From: Octopus sinensis
Taxonomy: Eukaryota
Assembly: GCF_006345805.1 (NCBI RefSeq)
Contig: NW_021831715.1
Span: 1-34,297, forward strand
Direction of reading: 5' to 3'
Length of the DNA stretch: 34,297 nt
Shown here: positions 8,941 through 9,603 of the stretch, one piece after another
Numbering within the stretch: position 1 is the stretch's first letter
Layout: the number at the start of each line of letters is the position of its first letter
The notes under the pieces: generated by a model
The model's database searches: none
What the model was told of the DNA's origin: nothing
Seen by the model: the letters and a program-made list of their open reading frames with translations, nothing else
Made by a program: the position numbers and the translations under genes

Positions 8941-9177
8941 TTGGACTACATAAACATTGATTTTGTCACGGGTACTTTTCACTTCCCTTCTTCGTAAAGG
9001 CTCCACTGACCGCTACTATTTTTTCGATATTCATATTTCACACCCTCTTGATTTTGACTTCCAGGTCTTTGTACCTGTGCAGCTTCTCTGTGACTTTCAT
9101 TGTTTATCTCGGGAAGTTTTTAATTATTTACATTATTTACATTCGACGAATATTAGTTCTCATCTTGTTTGCTGTTA

Positions 9178-9221
9178 ACACAACATTTCGGCTGATATAC
9201 CCGCCAGCCTTCTTCAGGCGC
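9178..9221 (-). ncRNA. Minimal type-I hammerhead motif (inverted arm copy)
   Basis: Minus strand reads GCGC-CTGAAGA-A-GGCTG-GCGGGTATAT-CAGCC-GAAAT-GTT-GTGT. One C>T change in stem III. Confidence 0.7.
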
Positions 9222-9386
9222 ATGGCGTTGTGGTTAAGAGCGTGGGCTACTAACCCCAAGATTCCGAGTTCGATTCCAAGCAGTGACCTGAACTATAACA
9301 ACAACAACAAAAACAACAACAACAATGATAATAATAATATCGAAGAATACCTTAGGAATGAGAACCCAGGTTCGAAATTTCCCCAA

Positions 9387-9432
9387 GACACCTGAAGAAG
9401 GCTGTAACTTATATCAGCCGAAACGTTGTGTT
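9387..9432 (+). ncRNA. Minimal type-I hammerhead ribozyme motif
   Basis: GACAC-CTGAAGA-A-GGCTG-TAACTTATAT-CAGCC-GAAAC-GTT-GTGTT. Stems I and II are intact, cleavage triplet GUU. Confidence 0.8.
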
Positions 9433-9603
9433 AAAAACAAACAAGATGAGGACAAATATCCGTCGAATGTAAATAATGTAAATAATGTACATAAGTCCAC
9501 ATCTCTTAAACATAGAAAATGTTGATTAGTAAGTACACACCGCTAAGTATACACCATCTGGTTTCCTTGTCCTTAATTGCATTGCAAGGGTTACTCTCTT
9601 ACA

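What the first reader, a model, noticed from the sequence alone, without database searches (positions are those of the whole stretch)
9123..9486. tRNA-headed, hammerhead-tailed SINE with a Penelope-style inverted 5' arm
Seen: a Pol III tRNA-like head (9217-9290; anticodon-like arm GGG-CTACTAA-CCC), a triplet spacer, an intact HHR (9387-9432) and an AATGTAAAT-repeat tail. An inverted 96-nt copy of HHR plus tail abuts the first base of the head through a GG(C/T)G microhomology. Established: SINEs normally borrow a LINE 3' tail; PLE ends carry HHRs and often show inverted partial terminal repeats; the schistosome Sm-alpha repeats are a precedent for an HHR-bearing SINE-like element. Inference: this is a SINE that parasitises a Penelope-like element, using self-cleavage rather than a T-run or poly(A) to define its RNA 3' end. 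Five of the 11 arm differences fall in loop II while both stem II strands are preserved.
Basis: partly seen in the sequence, partly recalled or inferred. Interest (0 to 1): 0.85.

Follow-up and report, generated by a model that had tools for sequence, protein, structure and literature searches.

The report
Octopus SINE with hammerhead-ribozyme tail
This is one copy of a short octopus mobile element with a tRNA-type promoter head and a tail carrying the miniature hammerhead ribozyme typical of Penelope-like retrotransposons; it probably borrows their copying machinery, though no matching Penelope element was found.

Summary
The 96-nt inverted repeat is 9123-9218 / 9391-9486 (85/96 identical). 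The head carries Pol III A and B boxes. A complete hammerhead core lies at 9387-9432.

The hammerhead is the Penelope-type minimal form: an extra base after A9, a G10.1-C11.1 pair, no loop III and a palindromic ACGU. This explains why Rfam finds nothing.

Head and hammerhead tail form one element. An independent full copy with the same order lies in Octopus sinensis and O. vulgaris (81% identity), and three truncated copies lie nearby.

Three corrections:
- The element ends at about 9517, not 9486. The inverted arm lacks these last 31 nt.
- The cleavage site sits 90 nt upstream of the 3' end, and every copy whose 3' part is present (the L005 plus-strand piece is 3'-truncated) keeps that downstream stretch. 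Self-cleavage therefore cannot define the 3' end of the copied RNA.
- The five loop II differences are one contiguous change in the direct copy, not evidence of selection.

The octopus loci contain real Penelope-like elements with the same hammerhead layout, including one remnant in the window at 15971-16005. Their sequence does not match this tail, so the partner is unidentified.

Verdict: a real hammerhead-bearing SINE, probably mobilised by Penelope-like elements. It is a new member of a kind known from schistosome SMalpha elements.

The parts
9123..9218 (-). Inverted, 5'-truncated partial copy of the element. It runs from hammerhead position 2.1 (CCUGAAGA...) through the post-cleavage tail into the 9-mer repeats. 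It lacks the last 31 nt of the element. Its hammerhead has C->U at position 15.2 (a CpG transition).
   Evidence: 96 nt, 85/96 identical to 9391-9486; the flank beyond 9123 matches the terminal extension no better than shuffled sequence. Its loop II (GCGGG) resembles the family consensus.
9217..9290 (+). tRNA-derived head with an internal Pol III type-2 promoter. The A box is 9223-9233 (TGGCGTTGTGG). The B box is 9267-9277 (AGTTCGATTCC).
   Evidence: the box pair is expected 0.005 times per shuffled window. The L001 copy has a perfect A box. The 5' end GGCGCATGGC is shared with another SINE head at 4114(-). ARAGORN and Rfam tRNA searches are negative.
9291..9339 (+). Variable microsatellite spacer, (AAC)n followed by (AAT)n.
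   Evidence: The spacer is 24 nt longer in L001. Two truncated copies begin inside it.
9340..9386 (+). Unique body (ATCGAAGAATACCTTAGGAATGAGAACCCAGGTTCGAAATTTCCCCAA).
   Evidence: Conserved in four independent copies. It is translated as MRTQVRNFPK at the predicted N-terminus of O. sinensis LOC115224785.
9387..9432 (+). Type I minimal hammerhead motif. Helix I is GACAC/GUGUU. The core is CUGAAGA, followed by a bulged A. Helix II is GGCUG/CAGCC. Then come GAAA, the C15.2-G16.2 pair with no loop III, and U16.1 U17. The predicted cleavage site is between 9427 and 9428.
   Evidence: 0 hits in 200 shuffles. The features match Cervera & de la Pena 2014. It is intact in L001 and L002.
9433..9486 (+). 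Post-hammerhead tail, including the start of the AATGTAAAT repeats. The array spans 9466-9494, with 3.2 units here and 1.3 to 2.3 units in other copies.
9487..9517 (+). Terminal extension GTACATAAG TCCACATCTCTTAAACATAGAA. This is the true 3' end of the element and is absent from the inverted arm.
   Evidence: The same TCCNCATCTCTTAAANNTAGAA terminus occurs in L001 (10131-10152) and L005 (14650-14672, minus strand) with unrelated flanks.

Best explanation
Window 9123-9517 holds one insertion of an octopod tRNA-derived SINE family. The element is about 300 nt and has five sections:
- a Pol III A/B-box head;
- an (AAC/AAT)n spacer;
- a roughly 47-nt body;
- a Penelope-type minimal hammerhead;
- a roughly 90-nt tail that ends in TCCNCATCTCTTAAANNTAGAA.

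Shown:
- The family exists with this fixed order in at least two independent full-length copies and three truncated ones.
- The hammerhead motif is complete and far beyond chance.
- Penelope-like elements (PLEs) with the same hammerhead layout, about 115 nt from their 3' end, live in the same genomes.

Inferred:
- The SINE RNA is made by Pol III from the head.
- Its 3' module (hammerhead plus tail) mimics the 3' pseudo-LTR end of a PLE.
- That module is recognised in trans by a PLE reverse transcriptase / GIY-YIG endonuclease.
- The integration reaction produced, in one event, the full direct copy plus an inverted 5'-truncated partial copy. The two are joined at a 2-4 nt microhomology, and the inverted copy lacks the terminal 31-nt extension.
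- The hammerhead does not set the 3' end of the copied RNA, because 90 nt downstream of the cleavage site are inherited. It is more likely a recognition or structural module, or a relic of the PLE end, and could cleave only as a dimer.
For: Linkage of head and tail:
- L001 9842-10151 aligns to window 9222-9517 at 81% over 320 columns. The head is 94% identical and the body and tail 85%.
- The flanks are unrelated.
- The O. vulgaris orthologue is identical over the aligned head and body segments.

Further copies:
- L001 5986-6088(-), L004 32555-32738(+) and L005 14650-14770.

Hammerhead:
- The descriptor gives 2 hits in the window against 0 in 200 shuffles.
- The bulged base after A9, the G10.1-C11.1 pair, the palindromic 15.2/16.2 pair and the short helix I are exactly the traits reported for PLE minimal hammerheads.
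- The same paper reports paired minimal hammerheads 100-700 bp apart on opposite strands.

PLE presence:
- tblastn with PLE RT/EN sequences hits L005 30151-29393 (E = 1e-28), L003 and L004.
- The L005 element's 3' UTR and four other sites, including window 15971-16005, carry CUG(A/U)NGA-A-GAGC..GCUC-GAAA-CG-UU. The window copy has the canonical CUGACGA; the other four have U at position 6.

Architecture:
- Here the extension is 31 nt and is absent from the arm.
- Three of five independent insertions have an inverted piece at the 5' junction.
- No LINE in about 240 kb of octopus DNA shares the tail.
Against: - No PLE with a matching tail was found. The only PLE family sampled has an unrelated 3' sequence.
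- The sample is small: five independent insertions in about 240 kb.
- Arm-to-arm identity (88.5%) is no higher than arm-to-unrelated-copy identity (86.5-87.5%). Divergence therefore does not show that the two arms arose together.
- The L005 arrangement consists of complementary, non-duplicated segments. That is the geometry of LINE-1 twin priming, which a LINE could also produce.
- A short tandem 9-mer near the 3' end with variable copy number is also a feature of LINE-type tails.
- Two of five copies have deletions that remove the CUGANGA half of the hammerhead.
- Four of five PLE hammerheads have U at the essential position A6. This suggests catalysis is dispensable.
- No target-site duplication of 5 nt or more was seen.
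- Rfam and ARAGORN recognise neither the hammerhead nor the head.
Confidence: 0.55

Rival explanations
1. This is an ordinary LINE-dependent tRNA-SINE. The 3' module comes from an unsampled LINE. The hammerhead-like motif is an inactive relic or an incidental part of that tail. The inverted pieces arise from twin priming or snap-back during LINE-type target-primed reverse transcription.
For: - The AATGTAAAT unit varies in copy number among copies, like the tandem repeats of LINE tails.
- L005 has complementary inverted and direct segments with a 5-nt overlap, as in twin priming.
- 5' truncations are common.
- Several LINE RT ORFs lie in the same loci.
- The hammerhead is deleted in two copies.
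Against: - The 9-mer array is not terminal. In three copies 22-31 further conserved nt follow it.
- The window arm duplicates a segment that is also present in the direct copy. Twin priming does not do this.
- The motif carries four PLE-specific hammerhead traits and gave zero hits in shuffles.
- No LINE in about 240 kb shares the tail.
Confidence: 0.25
2. There were two independent insertions. An older, minus-strand, 5'-truncated copy later lost its 3' terminus. A younger full-length copy then happened to land at its truncated end.
For: The arms are 88.5% identical, no closer than either arm is to the O. sinensis copy. The loop II sequences differ at five consecutive bases.
Against: - There is no gap between the arm's inner end and head base 1, and 2-4 nt of shared microhomology.
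- Both arms carry the three-unit state of the 9-mer, where other copies have two or fewer.
- The older copy would also need an exact loss of its last 31 nt.
- Other copies also have inverted pieces at the same kind of junction.
Confidence: 0.1
3. This is chance nesting. A fragment of a tRNA-SINE head sits between two inverted PLE pseudo-LTR remnants, so head and hammerhead are not one element.
For: No second copy exists in the 34-kb window. A similar GGCGCATGGC head begins another SINE family in the window.
Against: The same head-spacer-body-hammerhead-tail order occurs at an unrelated locus in O. sinensis and O. vulgaris, without the left arm.
Confidence: 0.03
4. This is a foldback or MITE-type DNA transposon with 96-bp terminal inverted repeats that captured a SINE head.
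For: Long inverted arms flank a 172-nt core.
Against: The right arm is not terminal, because 31 conserved nt follow it. The full copy in L001 has no left arm. There is no target-site duplication.
Confidence: 0.02

Closest known systems
SMalpha / Sjalpha SINE-like retroposons of Schistosoma (Ferbeyre et al. 1998; Laha et al. 2000, as cited in PMC8490949)
   Same: Both are short (about 300-335 nt), non-coding, dispersed retroposons that carry a type I hammerhead. That SMalpha also has Pol III promoter boxes is from my own knowledge.
   Different: SMalpha has a canonical hammerhead with proven activity. This element has the minimal, loop-III-less, bulged-base form that is expected to act only as a dimer. 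The host phylum is different (Mollusca). Sequence homology was not tested. The one-sided extension and inverted-arm junctions seen here have not, to my knowledge, been described for SMalpha.
[quoted passage not shown] 2017)
   Same: The motif architecture is identical: CUGANGA, an extra base before G10.1-C11.1, GAAA, a palindromic 15.2/16.2 pair and a 4-5-bp helix I. The position, about 90-115 nt from the 3' end, is also the same. Pairs on opposite strands 100-700 bp apart are reported there too.
   Different: Here the motif sits behind a tRNA-type Pol III head in a roughly 300-nt element with no ORF. Its helix and flank sequences are unrelated to the octopus PLE family found in these loci.
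Metazoan non-LTR retrozymes (Cervera & de la Pena 2020; Li et al. 2026 preprint, 10.64898/2026.07.22.740005)
   Same: Both are non-autonomous, hammerhead-bearing elements proposed to use PLE machinery.
   Different: Retrozymes are tandem repeats that are processed into circular RNAs and have no Pol III head. This element is a dispersed single unit with fixed 5' and 3' ends. No tandem copies were seen.
Classical tRNA-derived SINEs of octopus (OK, OR1, OR2; Ohshima & Okada 1994)
   Same: Both have a tRNA-type head with A and B boxes. The 5' end GGCGCATGGC is shared with another SINE in the window.
   Different: I know of no hammerhead reported in these families.

Membership tests
tRNA-derived SINE | Internal Pol III promoter: an A box and a B box at tRNA-like spacing near the 5' end | tested here: met
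   Window 9223-9233 and 9267-9277 each match at 10 of 11 positions. The L001 copy has a perfect A box. The pair is expected 0.005 times per shuffled window.
tRNA-derived SINE | Recognisable similarity to a tRNA (cloverleaf or model match) | tested here: not met
   ARAGORN finds nothing in the window or in four loci. Rfam tRNA gives no match at E<=10. The fold is no better than shuffles. The head is tRNA-like only in its promoter boxes and in its resemblance to other SINE heads.
tRNA-derived SINE | Dispersed multi-copy family with a constant head-body-tail order | tested here: met
   Two independent full copies and three truncated ones lie in about 240 kb from octopus genomes. Genome-wide copy number is not measurable with these tools.
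tRNA-derived SINE | 3' tail shared with an autonomous partner element | tested here: inconclusive
   No LINE or PLE in the sampled loci shares the tail. Only one PLE family and a few LINEs were sampled.
tRNA-derived SINE | Target-site duplication | tested here: not met
   No flanking direct repeat of 5 nt or more was found for the window unit. Nothing convincing was found for L001.
Hammerhead ribozyme, PLE-type minimal variant | Conserved core: C3 U4 G5 A6 N7 G8 A9, G12 A13 A14, the A15.1-U16.1 pair and H17 | tested here: met
   9392-9427 reads CUGAAGA ... GAAA CG UU. The same core occurs in L001 and L002 and in the inverted arm.
Hammerhead ribozyme, PLE-type minimal variant | An extra unpaired base between positions 9 and 10.1, a G10.1-C11.1 pair, a palindromic 15.2/16.2 pair with no loop III, and a 4-5-bp helix I | tested here: met
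   All four traits are present. They are listed as hallmarks in PMC4209133.
Hammerhead ribozyme, PLE-type minimal variant | Match to the curated Rfam hammerhead models | tested here: not met
   No hammerhead family matches at the gathering score or at E<=10. This is expected, because the Rfam type I model requires helix III.
Hammerhead ribozyme, PLE-type minimal variant | Self-cleavage, as a monomer or a dimer | not testable with these tools
   This needs an in vitro transcription and cleavage assay. Published minimal hammerheads cleave weakly and only as dimers.
PLE-mobilised non-autonomous element | Insertion architecture: an inverted 5'-truncated copy at the 5' end, and a 30-40-bp extension on one side only | tested here: met
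   In the window, the arm 9123-9218 abuts the head, and the 31-nt extension 9487-9517 is absent from the arm. Inverted junction pieces also occur in L001 and L005. The criterion comes from PMC8557442. The sample is small.
PLE-mobilised non-autonomous element | 3' end homologous to an autonomous PLE of the same genome | tested here: not met
   The octopus PLE family found here (L005 30382-28796 with its 3' UTR, four more 3' ends, and the window remnant) shares only the hammerhead core and layout, not the sequence. Other PLE families could not be sampled.
Non-LTR retrozyme | Tandem head-to-tail repeats, each with a hammerhead, that yield circular RNA | tested here: not met
   All copies found are single dispersed units, or inverted pairs. 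No tandem array of this element was seen.

The most novel reading that the evidence does not exclude
Octopods harbour a Pol III-transcribed SINE lineage that has replaced the usual LINE-derived tail with a pseudo-LTR-like module from a Penelope-like element, minimal hammerhead included, and is retrotransposed by PLE RT / GIY-YIG endonuclease. As far as the held literature shows, this would be the first explicit SINE-PLE partnership documented in molluscs. It would also be a roughly 300-nt natural reporter that preserves the peculiar PLE integration products (inverted partial copy, one-sided 31-nt extension, breakpoints at the 5' edge of the hammerhead).
Probability: 0.45. Interest if true: 0.6.

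Novelty: new member of a known kind. Interest (0 to 1): 0.5.

Why it matters
How Penelope-like elements integrate is still unknown. So is the purpose of their minimal hammerheads, which cleave poorly in vitro and are absent from very successful clades. A 300-nt non-coding passenger with a defined Pol III 5' end and a PLE-like 3' module would help in two ways. It would be a compact substrate for retrotransposition and cleavage assays. Its many genomic copies would also record junction types at single-base resolution.

The data here already argue that hammerhead cleavage does not set the 3' end of the copied RNA. They also suggest that catalysis may be dispensable: the core is deleted in two SINE copies, and four of five PLE copies carry U at position 6.

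SINEs make up about 11.6% of the O. vulgaris genome. Of the 900 recently active SINE families, 893 are unclassified. Assigning partners to SINE families matters for cephalopod genome annotation. One copy also supplies the predicted start codon and first 36 residues of an O. sinensis gene model.

Tried and rejected
- Rfam, at gathering score and at E<=10, and ARAGORN recognised neither the hammerhead nor the head.
- A strict canonical hammerhead scan found nothing until one bulged base was allowed.
- blastn of the element against the window found no second copy.
- Exact-pattern scans of JGI metagenome contigs (two patterns) and IMG/VR found nothing.
- A six-frame chimeric peptide query found a single exonised copy in O. 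sinensis. This opened the route to octopus DNA.
- Isoform X2 (P0001) was not on record. Isoform X1 (P0004) was, and gave L001.
- The orthologous O. bimaculoides contig (L003) is collinear only from L001 position 12044 onward. No empty-site comparison was therefore possible.
- A search with the L005 PLE ORF returned 916 PLE proteins. None was labelled cephalopod.
- P0010 was not on record. P0053 gave a 1.4-kb contig without a 3' end. The P0006 gene range was too long for DNA to be returned.
- Pfam scans of the ten longest window ORFs found nothing.
- RNA cofolding of two hammerhead copies gave a domain-swapped duplex rather than a clear helix III dimer. I do not use it as evidence.
- No target-site duplication was found.
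- I rejected the idea that the arm continues, diverged, into the terminal extension.
- The L004 copy has no alternative head. The upstream sequence there is another repeat that itself ends in (AAC/AAT)n.
- Lunse et al. 2017 is not in the held library.

Full report
**What is in the sequence**

The window is AT-rich DNA dense in microsatellites and SINEs. I identify it as octopod. The element in question, and a Penelope-like (PLE) hammerhead elsewhere in the window, have homologues in loci fetched from Octopus sinensis, O. vulgaris and O. bimaculoides.

The arms are 9123-9218 and 9391-9486, 96 nt long and 85/96 complementary, with 172 nt between them. The inner end of the left arm overlaps the first bases of the head. 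The junction reads GGCG against an expected GGTG.

The head has an A box at 9223-9233 and a B box at 9267-9277. Each matches its consensus at 10 of 11 positions. Such a pair is expected 0.005 times per shuffled window. ARAGORN and the Rfam tRNA model do not recognise the head. Its fold is no better than that of shuffled sequence. It is a promoter-bearing tRNA derivative, not a tRNA. Its 5' end, GGCGCATGGC, is the same as that of another SINE in the window at 4114(-).

**The hammerhead**

9387-9432 reads GACAC CUGAAGA A GGCUG-(10 nt)-CAGCC GAAA CG UU|GUGUU.

- A strict canonical scan fails because of the extra A after A9.
- Rfam hammerhead models also fail.
- Allowing one bulged base gives two hits in the window and none in 200 block shuffles.

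The extra base is not a defect. Cervera & de la Pena (2014) list four traits as the recurrent hallmarks of the minimal hammerheads in PLE pseudo-LTRs:
- a base between positions 9 and 10.1;
- the G10.1-C11.1 pair;
- palindromic positions 15.2/16.2 with no loop III;
- a short helix I.

They propose that these motifs act as dimers, and they found weak activity in vitro. The same paper reports pairs of minimal hammerheads 100-700 bp apart on opposite strands. That is the arrangement seen here.

**Is it one element?**

No eukaryotic DNA collection was available, so I took an indirect route.

1. I searched a chimeric six-frame translation of the region against the protein database.
2. This found one hit. 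The predicted N-terminus of O. sinensis LOC115224785, MRTQVRNFPKTPEEGWRVYQPKRCVNNKHDEDNYPS, is a translated copy of the body plus hammerhead.
3. Through isoform X1 I fetched the locus as L001. I also fetched the O. vulgaris and O. bimaculoides counterparts and two paralogous O. sinensis loci.

L001 9842-10151 aligns to window 9222-9517 at 81% identity. It has the same order of head, spacer, body, hammerhead and tail. The flanks are unrelated, and there is no copy of the window's left arm. The O. vulgaris orthologue is identical over the aligned head and body segments. This rules out chance nesting.

A profile search found three more copies:

| Copy | Description |
|---|---|
| L001 5986-6088(-) | Starts in the AAT spacer. 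A deletion of about 30 nt removes the 5' half of the hammerhead. |
| L004 32555-32738(+) | Starts in the spacer. A 13-nt deletion removes CUGAAGA. |
| L005 14650-14770 | A composite of two pieces in opposite orientation. |

**Corrected boundaries**

Three independent copies (window, L001, L005) share TCCNCATCTCTTAAANNTAGAA after the 9-mer repeats, and then diverge. The element therefore ends at window 9517, not 9486.

The left flank beyond the inverted arm matches this 31-nt extension no better than shuffled sequence. The arm really does lack it.

**What this means for the mechanism**

The predicted cleavage site (9427/9428) lies 90 nt upstream of the 3' end. Every copy whose 3' part is present, including the inverted arm, keeps sequence downstream of the site; the L005 plus-strand piece is 3'-truncated about 22 nt past it. 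The RNA that was reverse-transcribed therefore extended past the hammerhead. Self-cleavage cannot be what defines its 3' end.

The five loop II differences between the arms are contiguous and peculiar to the direct copy (TAACT). The arm and the other copies have G(A/C)GG(G/A). This is best counted as one event, not as evidence of selection on helix II.

**The Penelope link**

I used PLE RT/EN protein sequences from the supplement of PMC6515669 as tblastn queries. They hit L005 30151-29393 (E = 1e-28), L003 and L004.

L005 holds a 456-residue RT ORF, followed after a frameshift by a GIY-YIG domain. About 570 nt downstream of that ORF lies a decayed minimal hammerhead. It is homologous to the second hit in the window, 15971-16005(-).

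Five such PLE 3' ends align. They read cuuu CUG(A/U)NGA A GAGC..GCUC GAAA CG UU aaag, about 115 nt from an end that abuts microsatellites. Only the window copy has the canonical A at position 6 (CUGACGA); the other four have U there.

Octopus PLEs therefore carry the same hammerhead layout, at the same distance from the 3' end, as the SINE. Their helix sequences and flanks are unrelated to the SINE tail, so this family is not the partner.

O. vulgaris is reported to have 31 recently active PLE families. I could not sample others.

**Insertion architecture**

Craig et al. (2021) describe, for PLEs:
- a high degree of 5' truncation;
- a 30-40-bp 'tail' present at one end only.

They state that the last two are not observed in LINE-type integration. 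The window unit fits this description, with an arm abutting the head and a 31-nt extension on one side.

The L001 full copy is preceded by an inverted piece of its own head (positions 25 to about 80).

The L005 composite is different. Its two pieces are complementary segments (about 9391-9449 inverted, and about 9445 to the end direct). That is the geometry of twin priming, which a LINE could also produce.

Arm-to-arm identity (88.5%) is no higher than arm-to-L001 identity (86.5-87.5%). Divergence therefore cannot show that the arms arose together. Three other points argue for a single event:
- the zero-gap junction;
- the microhomology at that junction;
- the three-unit 9-mer state that both arms share.

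No target-site duplication was found.

**Comparison with what is known**

Hammerhead-bearing SINE-like retroposons have been known since 1998 in schistosomes, as SMalpha and Sjalpha. Dispersed minimal hammerheads were attributed to truncated PLEs in 2014. Tandem retrozymes are now argued to be non-autonomous PLE derivatives.

I found no report of a hammerhead in an octopus SINE, or of a SINE-PLE pairing in cephalopods, in the held literature. Repbase, Dfam and the 1994 octopus SINE paper could not be consulted.

I therefore file the element as a new member of a known kind. It is a real SINE family with a Penelope-type minimal hammerhead.

- PLE mobilisation is likely but not shown (about 0.55).
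- A LINE partner is the main rival (about 0.25).
- The role of the hammerhead is open. The deletions of its core in two copies, and U at position 6 in four of five PLE copies, hint that cleavage is dispensable.

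Noticed in passing
window 15971-16005 (-): A second minimal hammerhead of unrelated sequence: guuu CUGACGA a GAGC ucc GCUC GAAA cg UU|aaac. It is homologous to the 3' UTR of a Penelope-like element in O. sinensis (L005 28228-28201) and to three other PLE 3' ends. It is a dispersed PLE 3' remnant with no ORF nearby.
   Followed up: yes
L003 10640-10667, L003 21741-21714, L005 45349-45376, L005 28228-28201: Four of the five PLE hammerhead copies read CUGU.GA, with U in place of the invariant A6. 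The change is shared between O. bimaculoides and O. sinensis. The founder of this subfamily probably already had a catalytically dead core.
   Followed up: partly
L005 30382-28796 (-): A fairly intact Penelope-like element. It has a 456-residue RT ORF (motifs GVAMGTRMGP and YIDDI), then a GIY-YIG domain (YCVSCSLCHSLYIGQTGR) after a frameshift. Its 3' UTR is rich in CT microsatellite.
   Followed up: partly
L001 10003-10110 (O. sinensis LOC115224785): The predicted start codon and first 36 residues of isoforms X1-X3 are translated from a copy of this SINE, hammerhead included. The O. vulgaris model of the same gene has a different N-terminus. The exon may be an annotation artefact or a genuine exonisation.
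   Followed up: partly
window 9391 equivalent; L005 about 14713: In both composites that involve the 3' module, one piece ends at the same position: the C just 5' of CUGAAGA, at the 5' edge of the hammerhead. This could be a preferred stop or template-switch point for the reverse transcriptase. There are only two cases.
   Followed up: no
L001 6040-6045; L004 32665-32668: Two of the five copies carry internal deletions (about 30 nt and 13 nt) that remove exactly the CUGANGA half of the hammerhead. The GAAA half and the tail are kept.
   Followed up: no
window 8400-8945 (-): A different tRNA-type SINE (head GGTGAGCTGGCAGAAACGTTAGCGC...) is arranged as a full copy followed head-to-tail by two 5'-truncated copies. 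TRF reports period 184 and 88% identity. This is a partial-tandem arrangement reminiscent of PLE-style insertions. I saw no hammerhead motif in it.
   Followed up: no
window 3780-4114 (-) and 5511-5567 (+): Two further tRNA-derived SINE heads with A/B-box pairs. The one at 4114 begins with the same GGCGCATGGC as the element studied.
   Followed up: partly
window 9360-9385: The SINE body contains a second B-box-like string, CCAGGTTCGAAATTTCCCC. It is conserved in all four copies that include this region.
   Followed up: no
L004 32302-32556 and L001 804-519 (-): Another repeat family ends in ...CACTC followed by (AAC)n(AAT)n. In L004 the truncated SINE copy starts within that microsatellite. Either the SINE inserted into a microsatellite, or recombination occurred between the two AAT tracts.
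   Followed up: partly
window 12000-14200: A 2-kb block of trinucleotide arrays (CAC, TTC, ACT, ATG/GAC) with strong GC skew. It produces many spurious ORFs of 100-200 residues, and none has a Pfam hit.
   Followed up: partly
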